Shown: positions 2,821 to 39,180, counted from the first letter of the stretch. The stretch is DNA of 64,000 nucleotides from IMGVR_UViG_3300018424_000006:155820-219819, one strand, 5' to 3'. Notes: generated by a model not told the origin, from the letters alone. Numbers and translations are program-made.

Positions 2821-3822
2821 TTAGAAAACGAAACCGTCTTCTTCTTCACCGGCTACTTCAGTAGTCTTAGAAGCTTCTTCTACCAATGCAGATGCCGCAC
2901 GAGTAAAGTCTGCTACTTTTTCTTTTAGCTTGGCGATACGAGGCTCACGCTGAACCGCTGTAGTCGCGAAGTGTAGAGATAGCTTTTCATCTGGCATACT
3001 GTCCAGAATCTCTTTAGGGTAGTAACCTACAGTTGAGTACAACTGGCTACCAGAGATTTGCTCAGAATCTGCATTAGGAATAACCGATGCAGTACTGATC
3101 ATCTTGCCCTTTAGAGTGTCTAGACGACTGACGTCAGACGTAATAACGACATCCACTAGTTGTGGAGGTACGCTAGTTACTTTGTTATAGCAGATGAAGT
3201 TAGCAATGTCTGCACGGTCTAGCTCAAGGTGTTGTTCACCCATCAATAGAGCCATGCGAGTTGCATCGTCAAGAACGCGAGCATCAACCTTTGTACGAGT
3301 ATTGATGTTACGACTACCTTCTTCGCCATTAGTGATGTTCTCATAATAGCTAATAAGGATTGGGTTCTTGGCGGTCTTTGAAGCTAGGTTCTGAAGAGTA
3401 GCTAGAGTCTTCAAAGTGTTGTCAGTTTCTTTTGCAGAGATAGTGCTACCCACTACTAAGCAAATTGCTGGTACCTGACGACGCGCTAGTTCTGCAGCTA
3501 CTAATGGGCCAATAACAGAACCAGAACCACCAGAGGTGCTGAACAGTACAAGGTTAGTAGTACCCGGTTTGAAAGTTTTCAACATTTCAACCACTTGGTC
3601 ATATGCAGCTTGGTGAGCCACTGCACGATTCTTGCCTGCTCCAGACATACCTGCTACCACGAAGGTATTGGCATTGTCTTCTTCGGTTACGTTTGAATGG
3701 CTGGTATCCAAGAAAGTCTTTTCAACTGCTGGATAACCTACAGCGTTAGGGACAGTCAATTGCTTGGCCAAGTTAATGCCACAACCACCACAACCGTAAA
3801 TACGAAGTTTTGCTTTTTCCAT
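2821..3822 (-). CDS. phuZ: PhuZ phage tubulin/FtsZ-like GTPase
   Basis: RIYGCGGCGINL N-terminal motif, tubulin signature SGGSGSVIGP, LDRADI T7-like loop, acidic-aromatic tail EEEDGFVF; 333 aa. Confidence 0.95.
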   Translation of the reverse strand: MEKAKLRIYGCGGCGINLAKQLTVPNAVGYPAVEKTFLDTSHSNVTEEDNANTFVVAGMSGAGKNRAVAHQAAYDQVVEMLKTFKPGTTNLVLFSTSGGSGSVIGPLVAAELARRQVPAICLVVGSTISAKETDNTLKTLATLQNLASKTAKNPILISYYENITNGEEGSRNINTRTKVDARVLDDATRMALLMGEQHLELDRADIANFICYNKVTSVPPQLVDVVITSDVSRLDTLKGKMISTASVIPNADSEQISGSQLYSTVGYYPKEILDSMPDEKLSLHFATTAVQREPRIAKLKEKVADFTRAASALVEEASKTTEVAGEEEDGFVF

Positions 3823-3903
3823 AGTTCTCCCCTTTAGGAAATAAGATTAATGTATTTGGGTTTTCTTACTACCATGAGAGTTTTATTATCTCATGCCACT
3901 AAA

Positions 3904-3916
3904 GTAATATAGAATT
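3904..3916 (-). promoter_or_regulatory. phiKZ-type early promoter (TATATTAC) upstream of phuZ
   Basis: Minus strand reads AATTCTATATTAC; the same motif recurs upstream of six other minus-strand genes; TATATTAC is the described phiKZ early promoter core. Confidence 0.75.
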
Positions 3917-3995
3917 GAAATTCCCTAGAACTCCCATGAAATCAAGGGTCTAGGTATTTTTAGTTAATCCTCTGTAAAGCAATGAGGATATAAAA

Positions 3996-4778
3996 ATGAA
4001 CGCTATTGACTATGCTTTGAATAATCTTTTTCAACGTATACCTTCTGAACTAATCACTCAGGCTTTTGGTACTTCTCCTGTCTATGGTTATATTGATAAT
4101 CGTAGCTTAGAGCAGCGAGTTCGTGAAACCGTAATTGATTCTTTTGTTTCTATAGACTGCAATTTAGTAGGTGGACAACAGGTAATGCTTCCGATGAGTA
4201 CTTTGCCAGGCAAGCCTGTGGAAACTGGATGGATTTATGAAATACCTTTAGCCATGACTCAAGGAAGAAAGATTACTTCTGTATTGGGAGTAGAGTATTC
4301 GTCTGGCAATGGGAACCTTTCTAATCCTGATATGAATGCAATGGGTAGAAGTTTAATGGATATGGTAAACTTCGCTACAGGGCCTTCCGGAGGCGTCGCT
4401 AGCGGTAACGTCATGCTGGTGGGACCTAATACTGTTTTCGTTGGATCGAATATGGGAACCGGTAGCTTGTACCTGCGGTGCATGATTGCGAATGATTCAC
4501 AGATGGCTAATCTGAATCCACGTGCACTTCCTATCTTTGCTCAGTTATGTGAGTATGCTTGTAAAGGAATGATTTACAATGCATTACGAATTAAGCTTGG
4601 TGAAGGTTCGATTACGGGTGGTTCTTTAAATAGCTACTTGAATCAGATACTGGATGAATACTCTGATTCTTTTACGTTGTACAATGAACTACGTGACGGT
4701 AAGTGGAAGAAGGTTTCTATTCTTGCTGATGACTTCACTCGACGTGAGTTGACTAGAATGTCATTACCTAGAAGCTAA
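3996..4778 (+). CDS. Conserved phiKZ-like virion structural protein
   Basis: 260 aa with GAGG RBS; the MNAIDYAL...IP.ELI..AF N-terminus is recalled from conserved phiKZ-like virion proteins divergent from phuZ. Confidence 0.7.
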   Translation: MNAIDYALNNLFQRIPSELITQAFGTSPVYGYIDNRSLEQRVRETVIDSFVSIDCNLVGGQQVMLPMSTLPGKPVETGWIYEIPLAMTQGRKITSVLGVEYSSGNGNLSNPDMNAMGRSLMDMVNFATGPSGGVASGNVMLVGPNTVFVGSNMGTGSLYLRCMIANDSQMANLNPRALPIFAQLCEYACKGMIYNALRIKLGEGSITGGSLNSYLNQILDEYSDSFTLYNELRDGKWKKVSILADDFTRRELTRMSLPRS

Positions 4779-33721: not shown

Positions 33722-34843
33722 TTACTCCTTAAAGTACTTTTCAGAGGCTTGTCGTGAAATCTCCATAAGTACCGCATTAACAATACCCATTATTTCAGCC
33801 GACAAAACGATACGATCCATGACGGATCGCCAACCAAAGATCATATCTATACTATCACCTTCTAGAGTCTCGTTGGTACCAGTAAGGATGCCGCCAAACA
33901 CAGTTTTTAACTGACTTGCCAAAACACCCTTATCCCCAATACCTACCCCTAGGTCTTGATCGATAAATATTTCAATTGCTACTTGACCCGGCTCCACTTT
34001 GTTGCCGGATACATAAACATTTTTATCTACATAACCACTAGTGGCCATGCCGCTACTCGTCGCTTTAACGTGTTGTGCGCGACGGCGGTCTCCCGCTTCT
34101 ACAATCTTCTTAACTGACTCAGACATGTTCTCTTTCTTAGAGCGATAAAGAACTTGTATGTCGGATACCTTACCCACAATTTTAGCTTTAGGGGCATGGT
34201 TAGAAAACTTACTTAACGCAGCTAATGCTTGTTCGTCAATAGAGTCTAAAGAAACACTACCGTCTTGGATAATACATAAAGGACTATCTAGATCAGTCTC
34301 GTCCCCAATCTTGACCATATTTAGAACATGGTCATCTTCATCAACAACAATAACTTTGCGTTTAGTATAAGCAGAACCTAGTTTCTCAGCTAAAGCAGCA
34401 CTAATCAAAGAACTATCTTCTAAGGTTCCATTACCTTCCATGAAAGCAACATTGGCAATCGCCCCAACCTTAAATGTAACGTTCTTTGGATTTAACCAAT
34501 CACGTTCGAAGTAGTCCTTGTTCCATGCAACGATATCGCCTTCTTTAACTTTGTCTCCAACTTTAAAGTCGGTAATAATTTCCTGAGGAATAGTTAAACC
34601 GCCTTGGATACCATGGTTAGTCCCAATCTTAACACCGGATGTTGAACCGTCTTTATTTTTGATGTAGACATATTCGTCAGTAATCTTTTCAATTACCCCA
34701 TCCATCTTAGCAGTATATGCAAACTCATCTGCTGTACGCGCACCAATCACCTGTTCATAACCAGTACGAAGAGGCATGGATTGATAACCCTTAGCATGAA
34801 CCATAGCAGACATCTGTACGTTCAATAAATTGGCTCTTTTTCC
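33722..34843 (-). CDS. Virion RNA polymerase beta subunit (gp178-like), exon 2
   Basis: In-frame GKRANLLNVQMSA continues exon 1 HDD, matching RpoB HDDANRALMGANMQ; also contains EDS and GDK...QLKT beta motifs. Confidence 0.88.
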   Translation of the reverse strand, partial: GKRANLLNVQMSAMVHAKGYQSMPLRTGYEQVIGARTADEFAYTAKMDGVIEKITDEYVYIKNKDGSTSGVKIGTNHGIQGGLTIPQEIITDFKVGDKVKEGDIVAWNKDYFERDWLNPKNVTFKVGAIANVAFMEGNGTLEDSSLISAALAEKLGSAYTKRKVIVVDEDDHVLNMVKIGDETDLDSPLCIIQDGSVSLDSIDEQALAALSKFSNHAPKAKIVGKVSDIQVLYRSKKENMSESVKKIVEAGDRRRAQHVKATSSGMATSGYVDKNVYVSGNKVEPGQVAIEIFIDQDLGVGIGDKGVLASQLKTVFGGILTGTNETLEGDSIDMIFGWRSVMDRIVLSAEIMGIVNAVLMEISRQASEKYFKE

Positions 34844-36375
34844 TGTTGGTATTAACTAGGTGTCGTTAGTACCTAGCCAGCAGTAATCTGCTGCTGCATG
34901 TCGCCATGCAGACTAGACCATATCTTCACCTCCAGCTTTACCTGCTGAGGTGCTCTCCGTTTCGAGTCCACTTGGACCCTACACCGTGATAAGCGGTTGG
35001 TCGTTGAACCTTGATCTTAGTCTTTCTAGACCTTAGACCCTTGGCTGCTGATTGTCTCTCACTTTACTTTTTCAAACATTCACGCTCACCGTTTCCAGTC
35101 ACGTTGTAGTAGTAAGCTTCTGAGTAGACCGGGTATGCAATTTATTAAAAATACCCGGCCCAGTTAAGCCATAACAACTTAACAGTTTCCAGCAATTAGA
35201 AGAGATTCTGACTAATCATTTCTGAATTAGCAGGACAGAATCAGTTTTAATTTCTTTGTAAATATCAGAATAGTTGTAGAACTTAAAGCCCTTCTTACGA
35301 GTTTTACCGGGACATTTGTTTATCCAGTAAGACATGGTTGTTTTACCAACCTCGAAGCTTCTAGCCGCATCAGCTAGTCTGATATAAATCCTCTCTTCAC
35401 CAGTCTCATCATTCTTGCAATAGATAGCACTATAGCCAGAACTCTTTTCGTAGTTAAGAACTGGATCATCCACAGTCTCCCATGGAGTTCCATCATCCAT
35501 CTTCAGCAAGTACAGGTTACCTTTAACAGCGAAGACTTCGAATGGATTATTTTTAATCCTAGTTGTAATGTTACTTTCCGGTAAGTCAATGGCACGTGCC
35601 GCTTCCCGGAAAGAACCATAACGCTCTATAGACCCCTTACAGTAGTCTTTTACCAGTATGGGTATCGATCTACCATAATTCTGCATTTCAAGCCGTAGTG
35701 CTTCATTAGAGGCCTTTTTCCATGGCGTTGTCGAAGTCCCGGACTTGTATAGCTTCCCTTCAGGAAAGATTTTCTGTCCGTCGCTACCTATGCGCTTCAG
35801 TAACTCGCCGCTACTCAATCCAAGTGTCTCCATTGCAATGGAGCGAAGAGGAAACTCTTCTATTTCTCCAGTGAATGGATCATAACTTATTAGAGGTGAG
35901 CGTGTACGCTTAAGTCCTGTGTCGACTGAATGTCTTACGTTCTCTTTAGCTGTACACCATTCAAGATTCTCTGCCGAATTGTCCTTAGGTAAACCATTTT
36001 TATGATTTACTTGTAAAGACTCCTTATTTGGAGTTTCTGGATAAAAGGCGGCTGCTGCTAATCGATGAAGAGCTACATGTACCTTCTTTCCGCTATCGTC
36101 AATAAAGCGGGTAGTAATGTAGCCTCTATCGTTAGGACTGACTTCCAGTAGACGACCGGTTTCTTTTACCTTAAATCTACCTTTGGCATTTACGCAATAA
36201 CGGCTAAAGTTAGGGATTTCGAAGAAGGTCTCGTCGCCCTCAACTGGTTTTGGATTAAAAATATTTCTCATTGTAATATACCTAATACTGATACATACAA
36301 TAAGATGACCTAAAATACTAACTGTACAAATTATAGATTAGGTCGCCAAAGAAATTATGAAACTAATTTTAGTTT
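34844..36375 (-). mobile_element. Group I self-splicing intron (IA2-like) with homing endonuclease ORF
   Basis: P1 GAUGAU/GUCAUC with a terminal U-G pair; P3 CUCUUC (35199-35204)/GGAGAG (34953-34958); P4 UGCUG (35190-35194)/CAGCA (35046-35050); P7 GACCA (34998-35002)/UGGUC (34916-34920); R element GUUCAACGACC, S element AAGAUAUGGUC; P9 hairpins. Confidence 0.92.
35216..36271 (-). CDS. Intron-encoded NUMOD4-HNH homing endonuclease
   Basis: NUMOD4 (IPNFSRYCVN..G), HRLAA..F, VNHKNG..DN..ENLEWCT..EN..H, and C-terminal NUMOD1-like helices (SFREAARAI, LADAARSF). Confidence 0.93.
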   Translation of the reverse strand: MRNIFNPKPVEGDETFFEIPNFSRYCVNAKGRFKVKETGRLLEVSPNDRGYITTRFIDDSGKKVHVALHRLAAAAFYPETPNKESLQVNHKNGLPKDNSAENLEWCTAKENVRHSVDTGLKRTRSPLISYDPFTGEIEEFPLRSIAMETLGLSSGELLKRIGSDGQKIFPEGKLYKSGTSTTPWKKASNEALRLEMQNYGRSIPILVKDYCKGSIERYGSFREAARAIDLPESNITTRIKNNPFEVFAVKGNLYLLKMDDGTPWETVDDPVLNYEKSSGYSAIYCKNDETGEERIYIRLADAARSFEVGKTTMSYWINKCPGKTRKKGFKFYNYSDIYKEIKTDSVLLIQK

Positions 36376-39180
36376 ATCATCGTGGTTAGTGCCCGGCATT
36401 AATAGGCCAGTGGTGGATAGCACACTACTAGAACCTTGTCCTTCTTTATAACGACTACTCACACCACGAACAGTGTCAATATTAGCGTTAGGAGAAAGAA
36501 TAGAACGAATACCTACTTTAGCACTATCTGGCGTACCTTCTGAGATAAGACCTAAGTCATTCTTATGGAAGATACGAGAACGCTTAACAAGAGTCTCTGC
36601 TGAACGACCACCCGCACCACCTAGGTTAACAGTTTCCTGTTCCTTTAAGCTGCTGATTGGATTCAGAGAACTTGCAGGAATAGTTGTTTGGTCGTTCTGG
36701 ATATCACCCATTACTGCCATTGGATTTACATCAATAGTAGCTGTCTTAGTAAACTGATTGTTCCTATGGCCACGCACACCTTCAACAAGTCTACGATACA
36801 AGGTACCAGAGAAACGCTCAATGCCACGGATACGCATGAACTCAGGATCAGTCTCATCAGGATGACGGTCGTCTTGAAGTAACTCAACCGCATAAAGCAA
36901 TAGCTCTTTATAGACAGTTGGTTGGTCTTTAGACTTTAGGATTTCTTCAGTGATTGGATCAATGAACATATCTTCCAAAAGTTCTAATTCATTTAAGTGG
37001 TAGTTACTACCGCCTAGGAATGTCATTAGAGGACCATAGCCTTCTTTACGGTTTAGCTGATCCATACGCAAAGTATGAATGGCTTTTCGTACAGGACGGA
37101 AGCCAGCATAAAGCATTGAGATCTCAGAGCGGCTAGCGTCGATAATAACCGTTTCGTCTTTAAACTTAACAGCAATTTCGTTGGCTTCAATAGGCTCACG
37201 AGAACCAGTGGCGACTATTCGGTAATTTACTTTGAGATACTTAAGTAGTTTCTCAAAACCTAGCAGATAAGAAAGAACCATAACAATAGGTACTTGCTTA
37301 TTGAAGACAGACATTACAATATGGTCACGAGGAGCAGTTCCTGCTTCAGGTAGAATGAAAGACTCTAGACGACCTTTAGACTCTGAATTACCCTTAGAAT
37401 GAAGAGTCAGTGCATTGTCCATATTGATAGTTAAGAACTCACCAGAGGAATTAGTAGCACAAACGACTACGCCATCTTTCTCTAGTTTCTTAAGTACGTC
37501 TTTACCGTACAATTCTTCACGTTTATCATAAGCAAAGTTGAATACAAACTTATTCGAAGTAAAGCCTTCTAACTTACTACCAATTGAGGAATAAGCTAGA
37601 GGTACCTTAGCTTCGATCTTCGTCATGTCGCCATAGCGAAGAGCCGTGATTGCTTTATTAGAAACGTCTAGACCAGCAGCATTGATATGCTTTAATAGCC
37701 AACGACCATAGTTATCTACAGCTTTAGGGGAACGCTTAATAAACGTCTTACCATAATAACTAGTCAGAGCAACCTTATCTGGTCCACTCTTACGAATTGG
37801 CATATCTACACGCTGAGAGTCAAACGTGTATTTAACACCACCCTTAAAGAAACGACCTTGGTCATCTAGTTTGGGGATTTGGAATTTAATAGTAGAACTC
37901 TTACCGGTAATAGGTTGAACTTTCACCGTGTATTCTAGCTGAGAATCCAGAGCATCTACAATCTCTTCCATCTGAACGTCGCGAACAATAACACCGGCAT
38001 CCTTAAGTTTAAGGAACATGTTATTTATATCACGGAACATGATGTTGTCCTGATAGTGCTTATCGAAATTACTTACTGAACTTTCCTTAATGGTAGGATC
38101 AATAATCTTATCGATAGCAGTAGGGATAGTACGAGAAACTACAGTCTCTTTAAATTCCACTTTAGAGGCTTCGCCGATAGGCTTACCAGTAATCGGGTCA
38201 GGAATAGATTCCGTAGCTTTGGCAAGTTCTATAATCTTAGCTTGCTCACGAGAAGACAATTGTCCTTCAGAACCTAGCTCAGAAACCATTTTAAGGATCT
38301 TAGGGCTAACCGCACCGTCAGCAGCCTGTTCAGTTTCTTTCTCAACTTCTAACGCAGCTGTCTCTACAAGACTCTTCTGCTCAACAAACTTCTCAAGTAC
38401 TTGATAGAAATGTTTCTGTCTAGTCTCTACTGAATCTTTATCGTCTTCATTAAAGCGGAATTGCAGAGCAGGAATCACGCTAACAAAACCAGCACCCATG
38501 AAAACAAAGTTAAGTTGCTTTAGCTGTTCCTCAGAAAGAGTAGAAAGACTACCTTTCCCTTCAATGAACAACCATAGGTCACGAAGTCCTAATGCTTCAA
38601 ATGTATGCCACTTAGTCGCATGCGTATTACTTAGCTCCTCAGTGATCATTTTAAAATCAGCAAAAGCAGGCAATACGTTTGGAAGACGATACAAAGAAAA
38701 CGTCTCACGTTCTTCCGTGGTAATCTTAATGCCCTTCAAGAACATATCGTTAATGTTACTCCATTCATAGTACGGAGTAAGGATATGGTCAGAGTAGTCG
38801 ATACCATGAGTTAGGAAACTATAATCATAAACAACTAAGTTACGACGACTATCTAAAGCTTTACCGATGTCGCGAGCACGACGTACACGTCCTTGACTAC
38901 GGAAGTAGACGGATTCCATCTTCTTGTAGTTTTGCTTCTTGCGGATGGCCTTACCTTTGGTAATTGGTAATTCAGTTTCATGAAAGACACGAACGTCTTT
39001 AGGGAAATTAACAATCATTGGATGGGAGCCCCGAATACCTAGTTCAGGACTGTCCATATCGATATAGTGCAAAGCAGAGTCTAAAGGTAGCTGGAAGTCT
39101 TTAGCTGGATGAACCTTAAGTAGGTTCAAGGCTTTGCCCGGAAGTATAGAAAACTTCTTTAAAAAGGGAGCATAAAGCAT
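36376..39180 (-). CDS. Virion RNA polymerase beta subunit (gp178-like), exon 1
   Basis: 935 codons ending ...LMPGTNHDD; contains QRVDMPIRK, VALTSYYGK, GGAGGRS and SEGTPDSAKVG motifs. Confidence 0.9.

What the first reader, a model, noticed from the sequence alone, without database searches (positions are those of the whole stretch)
34835..34860. 3' splice site appears to end in A, not the near-universal omega-G
P1 fixes the 5' splice site after GAUGAU (phase 0, position 36376). The RpoB alignment requires exon 2 to start at GGA AAA AGA (34843), making the last intron bases ...ACCAACA. Using the G at 34843 as omega-G gives GAU GAU GAA AAA GAG, which is out of frame by one base and would need a -1 slip on the A5 run. 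Using the G at 34856 inserts LIPT into a conserved motif and lies inside a hairpin. P7 retains the G-C guanosine-binding pair. So this is a rare omega-A intron, splicing coupled to frameshifting, or a one-base assembly error in the A-run (A6 would give DDEKR).
Basis: partly seen in the sequence, partly recalled or inferred. Interest (0 to 1): 0.72.

Follow-up and report, generated by a model that had tools for sequence, protein, structure and literature searches.

The report
Phage group I intron ending in A

Summary

- **Setting.** The window is part of a 219.8-kb phiKZ-like jumbo phage from a salt marsh. On the minus strand, a 1532-nt group I intron (36375..34844) carries an HNH homing-endonuclease ORF. 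It splits the virion RNA polymerase beta gene right after the conserved HDD.
- **RNA evidence.** Contigs from two of four salt-marsh metatranscriptomes join 36376 directly to 34843, with no shared letters at the joint. This gives ...CAC GAU GAU|GGA AAA AGA..., so the last intron base is A34844.
- **Assembly error excluded.** The A5 run is identical in several DNA assemblies and in every RNA contig that covers it. The in-frame joint also rules out frameshifting.
- **Family comparison.** Among 19 related introns at this insertion site, 18 end in G and only this one in A. The A sits in the same structural register, directly after a covarying 2-bp P9.0. The guanosine-binding G-C pair in P7 is unchanged.
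- **Precedent.** Natural omega-A introns are published for hexacoral mitochondrial ND5-717. I found no phage or bacterial case.
- **Not shown.** Splicing efficiency, self-splicing without proteins, and read-level exclusion of a minor intron-less or omega-G allele.

The parts
36376..39180 (-). Exon 1 of the virion RNA polymerase beta-subunit gene (phiKZ gp178 / PhiPA3 gp211 homologue); ends ...TNHDD
   Evidence: ORF list. PHROG 3148 'RNA polymerase beta subunit', E = 1.7e-235, ending at profile position 1050. tblastn to chimallivirus RNAP beta genes.
36304..36381 (-). P1 region. Exon strand GAUGAU (36381-36376) pairs with the internal guide GUCAUC (36309-36304), with U36376.G36309 at the 5' splice site. 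A3 bulge at 36375-36373. P1 extension CUAAAAU (36372-36366) / AUUUUAG (36316-36310).
   Evidence: Read from the sequence. Constrained fold -9.4 kcal/mol against a local MFE of -15.3, so P1 is plausible but not the thermodynamic optimum. The RNA joint fixes the 5' splice site itself.
34844..36375 (-). The whole group I intron, 1532 nt; begins AAACUA..., ends ...ACCAACA
   Evidence: Joint 34843->36376 skipping 1532 nt in two metatranscriptomes.
35216..36271 (-). Intron-encoded HNH homing endonuclease ORF (351 aa), between P1 and P2; its stop codon lies in the 3' strand of P2
   Evidence: Pfam HNH_3, E = 1.1e-10. PHROG 59 HNH endonuclease, E = 3.7e-35. 27.6% identity over 94% of its length to PhiPA3 gp210, E = 9e-25.
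34894..35259 (-). Ribozyme core P2-P9, with the P7.1/P7.2 insertions typical of subgroup IA
   Evidence: Rfam RF00028, 82.8 bits (gathering score 50), E = 1.5e-19.
34998..35004 (-). P7 5' strand A-(C bulge)-GACCA; G35002 is the G of the guanosine-binding pair
   Evidence: Rfam alignment. The G-C pair is invariant in 17 of 17 family members.
34910..34920 (-). P7 3' strand UGGUCU (34920-34915; C34916 pairs with G35002) and J7/9 AGUCU (34914-34910). G34913 and U34912 form P9.0.
   Evidence: Alignment A2.
34855..34911 (-). Peripheral hairpins: P9 (34911-34894), P9.1 (34893-34878), P9.2 (34877-34855; loop ACUAACGAC)
   Evidence: Fold -31.2 kcal/mol, z = -3.7. The same hairpins are present in relatives.
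34844..34854 (-). 3' tail UAAUACCAACA. A34846 and C34845 form P9.0 with U34912 and G34913. A34844 is the terminal (omega) nucleotide.
   Evidence: RNA joint. P9.0 covariation: 88% of cells paired and both pairs change on both sides, against 24-48% paired for the whole 8-pair structure in slid controls. The omega column is G in 16 relatives and A here.
33722..34843 (-). Exon 2 of the RNAP beta gene, starting GGA AAA AGA (GKRANLLNVQMS...), with its stop codon
   Evidence: PHROG 3148, E = 2.8e-126, residues 2-371 on profile positions 1052-1421. tblastn.

Best explanation
This is a mobile subgroup-IA group I intron carrying an HNH homing-endonuclease gene. It belongs to the same site-specific family as the PhiPA3 gp210 intron and sits after the catalytic-centre HDD of the virion RNA polymerase beta gene. 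Its terminal nucleotide has changed from the family's G to A. It is still removed accurately in nature. Shown: the intron's extent, the exon junction in RNA, the A at omega, the unchanged G-C guanosine-binding pair, and the conserved P9.0 register. Inferred mechanism: step 1 is ordinary, with exogenous G bound at the unchanged P7 pocket attacking after U36376, which is wobble-paired with G36309 in P1. In step 2 the 3' splice site is positioned mainly by architecture: P9.0 (AC/GU directly before omega), a weak P10 (exon-2 AAAA with the UUUU next to the guide sequence) and the P9-P9.2 scaffold. The A34844 ribose is thereby presented to the active site even though the base cannot make the G-specific contacts. 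Exon ligation is probably slower than with omega-G, and may be helped by a phage or host protein. [quoted passage not shown] Because only one phage population carries it, the change is probably a recent, tolerated G-to-A substitution rather than an old adaptation.
For: - **RNA joint.** Joint 34843->36376, unambiguous ('both' = 0), in two metatranscriptomes, with 66-nt and 38-nt anchors.
- **Depths in run X3.** The joint contig depth (5.3) matches exon depth (about 5-6). Intron contigs (depth about 7) stop 17 and 23 nt short of both boundaries, and no contig spans an unspliced boundary. This fits spliced mRNA plus excised intron and does not fit contaminating DNA.
- **Unspliced RNA also carries A.** Unspliced 3' boundaries in X4 and X5 show A at omega and no indels.
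- **DNA agrees.** L006 and L007 are identical over 9119 bp, and the JGI contig has the same boundary.
- **No intron-less DNA found.** The joined sequence is absent from viral contigs, metagenome contigs and the phage's own genome.
- **Expected junction.** About 45 intron-less homologues are contiguous at DD|xKR, and PHROG profile positions 1050 and 1052 flank the joint.
- **Family survey.** 18 of 19 introns at this site have U(-1) and omega-G. In alignment A2 the omega column is G in 16 sequences and A here. The P7 G-C pair is invariant, and P9.0 covaries.
- **Same-site introns are known.** 201phi2-1 gp273/274 is annotated as a joined CDS. The PhiPA3 intron is inserted after the same two aspartates (PMC11620839).
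- **Precedent.** ND5-717 has omega-A and still gives perfectly ligated exons (PMC8146996, PMC6545197).
Against: - The RNA evidence is Logan contigs, not reads. It gives no spliced-to-unspliced ratio and can hide minor alleles.
- Spliced RNA does not retain omega, so a minor omega-G subpopulation or an intron-less variant could in principle have produced the joint.
- The RNA libraries were not shown to be free of DNA.
- From my own recollection of the Tetrahymena literature, which I did not check here, omega-A mutants are severely impaired in exon ligation when the pocket is G-C.
- P1 as drawn is 6 kcal/mol above the local MFE, and P10 is only four A-U pairs.
- Omega-A occurs in a single phage population, so its evolutionary persistence is unknown.
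Confidence: 0.8

Rival explanations
1. The joined contigs come from a co-occurring intron-less variant of the same phage (its DNA or its transcripts). On this view the omega-A intron allele is itself splicing-defective.
For: Homing-endonuclease introns are often polymorphic in populations. RNA libraries can contain DNA, as the tool warns. About 45 related phages lack the intron.
Against: The joined sequence is absent from IMG/VR, JGI metagenome contigs and the phage's own genome. Every DNA assembly found carries the intron. In X3, joint depth is about equal to exon depth while the intron is present at similar depth without boundary-spanning contigs. A DNA mixture would not give that pattern. 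A phage unable to splice its virion RNAP beta gene should not be the dominant, complete genome in several samples. Even under this rival, the intron's boundaries, and so the A at its end, stay the same.
Confidence: 0.08
2. A minor omega-G allele (G at 34844) in the population produces the spliced RNA, and the dominant omega-A allele does not splice.
For: Contigs drop rare variants, and spliced RNA does not retain omega.
Against: No alternative letter was reported in any contig. A is present in every assembly and in the unspliced RNA contigs. The dominant allele would be lethal if it did not splice.
Confidence: 0.05
3. One-base assembly error in the A-run. The true sequence would have six A's, and canonical omega-G (G34843) would give DDEKR.
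Against: The A5 run is identical in two other IMG/VR assemblies and one JGI contig. It is also identical in RNA contigs X3 record 4, X4 records 11 and 12 and X5 record 17, with 0 gaps. The spliced RNA retains both G's.
Confidence: 0.01
4. Canonical splicing after G34843 or G34842 gives an out-of-frame mRNA, which ribosomal frameshifting on the A-run then rescues.
For: A slippery A-run follows the junction.
Against: The only joint observed is the in-frame one, 36376|34843. No joint at 34842 or 34841 was listed.
Confidence: 0.02

Closest known systems
PhiPA3 gp210 intron in the vRNAP beta gene gp211/209 (Birkholz et al. 2024, PMC11620839), and the annotated 201phi2-1 gp273/274 intron
   Same: Same host gene and same insertion point, directly after the two conserved aspartates. 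Same intron family: P7 5' strand UCAACGAC(U/C)A, P7.1/P7.2, three 3' hairpins with a UAACGA loop, and about 150-165 nt from P7 to the 3' splice site. The HNH endonuclease is homologous to gp210 (27.6% identity, E = 9e-25). The 201phi2-1 intron shares an identical J7/9 and P9 and the same AC/GU P9.0.
   Different: Those introns end in G (PhiPA3 ...AUCUCG|AUG; 201phi2-1 ...AUCACG|AUG). This one ends ...CCAACA|GGA. It also has U where the family has a nearly invariant G in the tail motif UGAAGA, and one compensated P7 pair (C-G for U-A).
Hexacoral mitochondrial ND5-717 group I intron (omega-A; PMC8146996, PMC6545197)
   Same: The terminal nucleotide is A instead of G, yet perfectly ligated exons are seen in transcriptome data.
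   Different: ND5-717 is an obligatory, vertically inherited organellar intron of fungal origin. It has mitochondrial genes in P8 and no homing endonuclease, and it is conserved across a large clade. The intron here is a mobile-type phage subgroup-IA intron with an HNH gene, and omega-A is seen in only one phage population.
Classical phage subgroup-IA introns (T4 td/nrdB/sunY, SPO1, Twort)
   Same: Core sequence and architecture (Rfam RF00028, 82.8 bits). The core has blastn similarity to introns in many phage records (440 records; Staphylococcus, Escherichia, Pseudomonas, Bacillus and others).
   Different: From my own knowledge, these all end in omega-G.

Membership tests
Group I intron (Rfam RF00028) | Conserved core P3-P9 that scores above the family threshold | tested here: met
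   82.8 bits against a gathering score of 50, E = 1.5e-19, full model 1-253.
Group I intron (Rfam RF00028) | 5' splice site after a U that forms a G.U wobble in P1 with the internal guide sequence | tested here: met
   The RNA joint puts the last exon base at U36376. GAUGAU/GUCAUC, with U36376.G36309, can form, although it is not the local MFE.
Group I intron (Rfam RF00028) | Guanosine-binding G-C pair in P7 | tested here: met
   G35002-C34916; this pair is invariant in 17 of 17 aligned family members.
Group I intron (Rfam RF00028) | Terminal intron nucleotide is G (omega-G) | tested here: not met
   The last intron base is A34844 by the RNA joint and in DNA. The column is G in the other 16 aligned relatives.
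Group I intron (Rfam RF00028) | Precise excision with exon ligation | tested here: met
   An in-frame joined form is present in two metatranscriptomes. It matches the contiguous sequence of intron-less homologues.
Group I intron (Rfam RF00028) | Protein-independent self-splicing started by exogenous guanosine | not testable with these tools
   Needs in vitro transcription and splicing. No contig reached the intron's 5' end, so an added G could not be looked for.
Mobile intron with HNH homing endonuclease (PhiPA3 gp210 type) | Intron-encoded HNH nuclease homologous to gp210, at the same insertion site | tested here: met
   Pfam HNH_3 and PHROG 59. tblastn to gp210, E = 9e-25. Insertion after the HDD aspartates, as in PhiPA3.
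Mobile intron with HNH homing endonuclease (PhiPA3 gp210 type) | Nicking of the intron-less target, and homing | not testable with these tools
   Requires biochemistry or co-infection experiments.
Natural omega-A group I introns (ND5-717 type) | Omega is A and ligated exons are still produced in vivo | tested here: met
   compare PMC8146996 and PMC6545197.
Natural omega-A group I introns (ND5-717 type) | Common descent with ND5-717 (organellar, obligatory, vertically inherited) | tested here: not met
   This intron belongs to a phage subgroup-IA family whose other members have omega-G. The omega-A state arose independently.

The most novel reading that the evidence does not exclude
This may be the first phage or bacterial group I intron, and the first mobile, endonuclease-bearing one, that uses a terminal A while keeping a G-specific binding pocket. 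If so, in this subgroup-IA scaffold the 3' splice site is chosen by P9.0, P10 and tertiary geometry rather than by recognition of omega-G. It would be a natural system, with 18 omega-G sister introns as built-in controls, for asking how the second step tolerates a non-G leaving nucleotide. It could also show whether omega-A serves to block 3'-splice-site hydrolysis and circularisation, or to throttle virion RNAP expression.
Probability: 0.6. Interest if true: 0.7.

Novelty: new variant of a known kind. Interest (0 to 1): 0.6.

Why it matters
Omega-G is treated as essentially universal in group I introns because the same pocket binds the guanosine cofactor in step 1 and the terminal G in step 2. 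The only natural omega-A case I could find in the literature is a mitochondrial intron (ND5-717).

Here the exception sits in a compact, clonable phage intron of a well-studied structural class. Many near relatives differ at that position, and environmental RNA shows accurate exon joining. That makes the question 'how is the second step done without omega-G?' directly testable by swapping A and G.

There is also a practical point. Intron-aware annotation that insists on a terminal G would mis-call this essential RNA polymerase gene as frameshifted or split.

Tried and rejected
- **Alternative canonical splice pair.** I considered U36371 with G34842, which would give HDDKLKR. It adds a residue that no homologue has and contradicts the RNA joint.
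- **Omega at G34856 (LIPT insertion).** This base is paired in P9.2, and no such joint was seen.
- **Unconstrained folding of the 5' region.** It does not return P1 (z = -0.48). P1 was obtained only with constraints.
- **Megablast of the locus against phages.** It found only about 45-nt core matches. Rfam at gathering threshold misses the BONAISHI and C-ZP2022 introns.
- **Search for closer relatives of the 3' end.** The exact P7-J7/9-P9 word found only this phage and 201phi2-1, so no sister lineage with omega-A could be found.
- **Literature searches for a phage or bacterial omega-A intron.** Searches found none. The search tool cannot match the Greek omega, so this is weak negative evidence.

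Full report
**Context.** The window is the last 64 kb of a 219,819-bp IMG/VR virus record with direct terminal repeats. On the minus strand, a 941-aa ORF (36355..39180) and the frame that opens at 34855 and runs to 33722 (373 in-frame codons from 34843) are the two parts of one gene. PHROG 3148 'RNA polymerase beta subunit' matches both parts (E = 1.7e-235 and 2.8e-126). Exon 1 stops at profile position 1050 and exon-2 residue 2 starts at 1052. tblastn finds the gene in about 300 phiKZ-like jumbo phages. The 201phi2-1 record annotates its homologue (gp273/274) as similar to phiKZ gp178, a virion RNAP subunit.

Between the two parts lie an Rfam group I intron core (RF00028, 82.8 bits, 34894-35259) and a 351-aa HNH_3 ORF (35216..36271).

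**The observation.** Reading the minus strand:
- Exon 1 ends ...AAC CAC GAU GAU at 36376.
- The intron starts AAACUAAAAU.
- The region before exon 2 reads ...CUAG(34856) UUAAUACCAACA(34844) | GGA(34843) AAA AGA GCC.

With a phase-0 5' splice site, the only in-frame G is G34856. It closes the last hairpin and would add LIPT. G34843 and G34842 break the frame.

**Direct RNA evidence.** The look-up of sequencing runs located salt-marsh DNA runs and four Illumina metatranscriptomes that hold this stretch. Laying the four RNA runs on 33725-37500 gave exactly one joint, 34843->36376, skipping 1532 nt.
- There are zero letters that could belong to either side of the joint.
- It occurs in X3 (437-nt contig, 371 + 66 nt, depth 5.3) and X4 (172-nt contig, 38 + 133 nt, depth 3.4).
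- No substitutions or indels were reported anywhere, including the A5 run.

The mRNA is therefore ...CAC GAU GAU|GGA AAA AGA..., which reads HDD|GKR. The intron is 36375..34844 and ends in A.

In X3 the joint contig has about the same depth as the flanking exon contigs (about 5-6). The intron is covered at about 7, by contigs that stop 17 nt and 23 nt inside its two ends, and nothing spans an unspliced boundary. That is the pattern expected of spliced mRNA plus excised intron, not of contaminating phage DNA. X4 (34824-35294) and X5 (34439-34849) also contain unspliced 3' boundaries, again with A at 34844.

**Assembly error and frameshifting.** Two other IMG/VR contigs, from different metagenomes, match the window over 9119 bp with no mismatch. 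A 219,843-bp JGI contig shows the same boundary; it may be the source assembly. Together with the RNA contigs, this removes the A6 hypothesis. The in-frame joint removes the frameshift hypothesis.

**Could the joint come from an intron-less allele?** The 39-nt joined sequence is absent from IMG/VR and from JGI metagenome contigs. A 24-nt version of it, allowing up to 2 mismatches, is absent from the phage's own genome. The X3 depth pattern also argues against a DNA mixture. This rival cannot be fully excluded without reads. Even if it were true, it would define the same intron boundaries.

[quoted passage not shown] The ORF here is a gp210 homologue.

I collected 75 IMG/VR loci with an exon-2 homologue, plus seven GenBank phages, and located both exons in each.
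- About 45 are intron-less and exactly contiguous at DD|xKR.
- 19 distinct introns sit at this same site. All share the P7 5' strand UCAACGAC(U/C)A, which lies 151-237 nt (mostly 151-167) upstream of the 3' splice site.
- 18 of the 19 have U at -1 and G at omega. This one has U and A.
- Most introns at neighbouring sites (3 to 11 nt downstream) also allow a canonical U/G solution; one, L082, does not obviously.

In a 17-sequence alignment running from P7 to exon 2 (A2), the omega column is G in 16 sequences and A here. The two nucleotides before omega pair with nucleotides 2-3 of J7/9 (P9.0), and this pairing covaries: UC/GA, AC/GU, AA/UU, CU/AG, AU/AU, CC/GG. 88% of cells are paired. The whole 8-pair structure (P7 plus P9.0) pairs 24-48% of cells when the partners are slid, and 0 of 500 shuffles reach the observed covariation score. 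In this intron the pairs are A34846-U34912 and C34845-G34913, the same AC/GU as in 201phi2-1, whose J7/9 and P9 are identical to this intron's. A34844 therefore occupies the structural omega position.

The guanosine-binding pair (G35002-C34916) is invariant in all 17. The only P7 difference is a compensated U-A to C-G change.

The genome's second intron, outside the window, splits the beta' NAD|FDGDQM motif. It ends canonically in ...AUUAG.

**Mechanism (inferred).**
- **Step 1.** It should proceed as usual. P1 can form between GAUGAU and GUCAUC, with the U36376.G36309 wobble and a 7-bp extension after an AAA bulge. The pocket for exogenous G is intact.
- **Step 2.** The base of A34844 cannot make the G-specific contacts. 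The 3' splice site is probably held in place by P9.0, a weak P10 (four A-U pairs) and the P9/P9.1/P9.2 scaffold. This would allow ligation at a reduced rate or with protein help.

[quoted passage not shown] The same could apply here. Because the A is seen in a single, essentially clonal phage population, a recent tolerated G-to-A transition is the most economical history.

**What is known.** Omega-A with perfectly ligated exons is documented for hexacoral mitochondrial ND5-717 (PMC8146996, PMC6545197). Those papers call omega-G 'universally conserved'. I found no report of a phage or bacterial case, but the text search cannot match the Greek letter, so this is weak negative evidence. I classify the finding as a new variant of a known kind: a known intron family at a known site, carrying a rare and independently arisen omega-A.

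**Limits.**
- The RNA evidence consists of assembled contigs. It gives no efficiency estimate and has no sensitivity to minor alleles.
- Self-splicing and the rate of the second step are untested.
- The P1 and P10 pairings are sequence-based proposals.

Noticed in passing
L002 (G000:C1:146294-149626; intron core at G000:C1:147794-148126, minus strand; outside the window): The same phage has a second group I intron (RF00028, 74.3 bits) with a 272-aa ORF. It splits an RNAP beta'-like gene inside the catalytic NADFDGD motif (exon 1 ...APNAD | exon 2 FDGDQMSG). It begins AAAC, like the intron studied here, and ends canonically in ...GAAGAUAUUAG.
   Followed up: partly
window 34853-34854 (tail position after P9.2); alignment A2 column 203: Besides omega, this intron has a second change at a nearly invariant G of the family: the tail motif UGAAGA reads UUAAUA here. 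The role of that G is unknown. Both conserved G's of the 3' tail are lost together.
   Followed up: no
window 34862-34870 (L9.2 loop ACUAACGAC); same loop in L003, L004, L008-L011 and many IMG/VR loci: The loop of the last hairpin carries a conserved UAACGA(A/C)C that resembles, and is not complementary to, the P7 5' strand CAACGAC. This may reflect a tertiary contact or an alternative pairing. It remains unexplained.
   Followed up: no
L018, L022, L023, L071, L012, L085, L086, L003: The same RNAP beta gene has at least two further intron insertion points 3-11 nt downstream (after DDG, and after DDPKR plus 1-2 nt). They hold a different-looking intron lineage whose 3' end reads ...GGACANNAGG.
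   Followed up: partly
L082 (IMGVR_UViG_3300042566_001512), locus positions 2822-3500: Exon 1 ends ...KDD and exon 2 resumes at ...RNFVAIQQ. The xKR codons are missing, and no canonical U/G pair restores the frame across the 666-nt gap. There may be two adjacent introns with a mini-exon, or another non-canonical junction.
   Followed up: no
L003 (BONAISHI ORF25/26), L004 (C-ZP2022), L009 (PhiPA3 gp211/209), L010 (Kodama), L011 (Haymo), L012 (phiKp_32): In these GenBank records the intron-split RNAP beta gene is annotated as two separate CDSs, with read-through tails or internal starts, rather than as a joined CDS. Only 201phi2-1 is annotated as joined.
   Followed up: partly
L005 (Shewanella phage FishSpeaker, locus 3887-4256): A group I intron (72.5 bits) follows a 1509-nt 'RNA polymerase beta subunit' CDS and shares a 35-nt identical core stretch with the intron studied here. 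Its host gene segment appears to be a different RNAP subunit.
   Followed up: no
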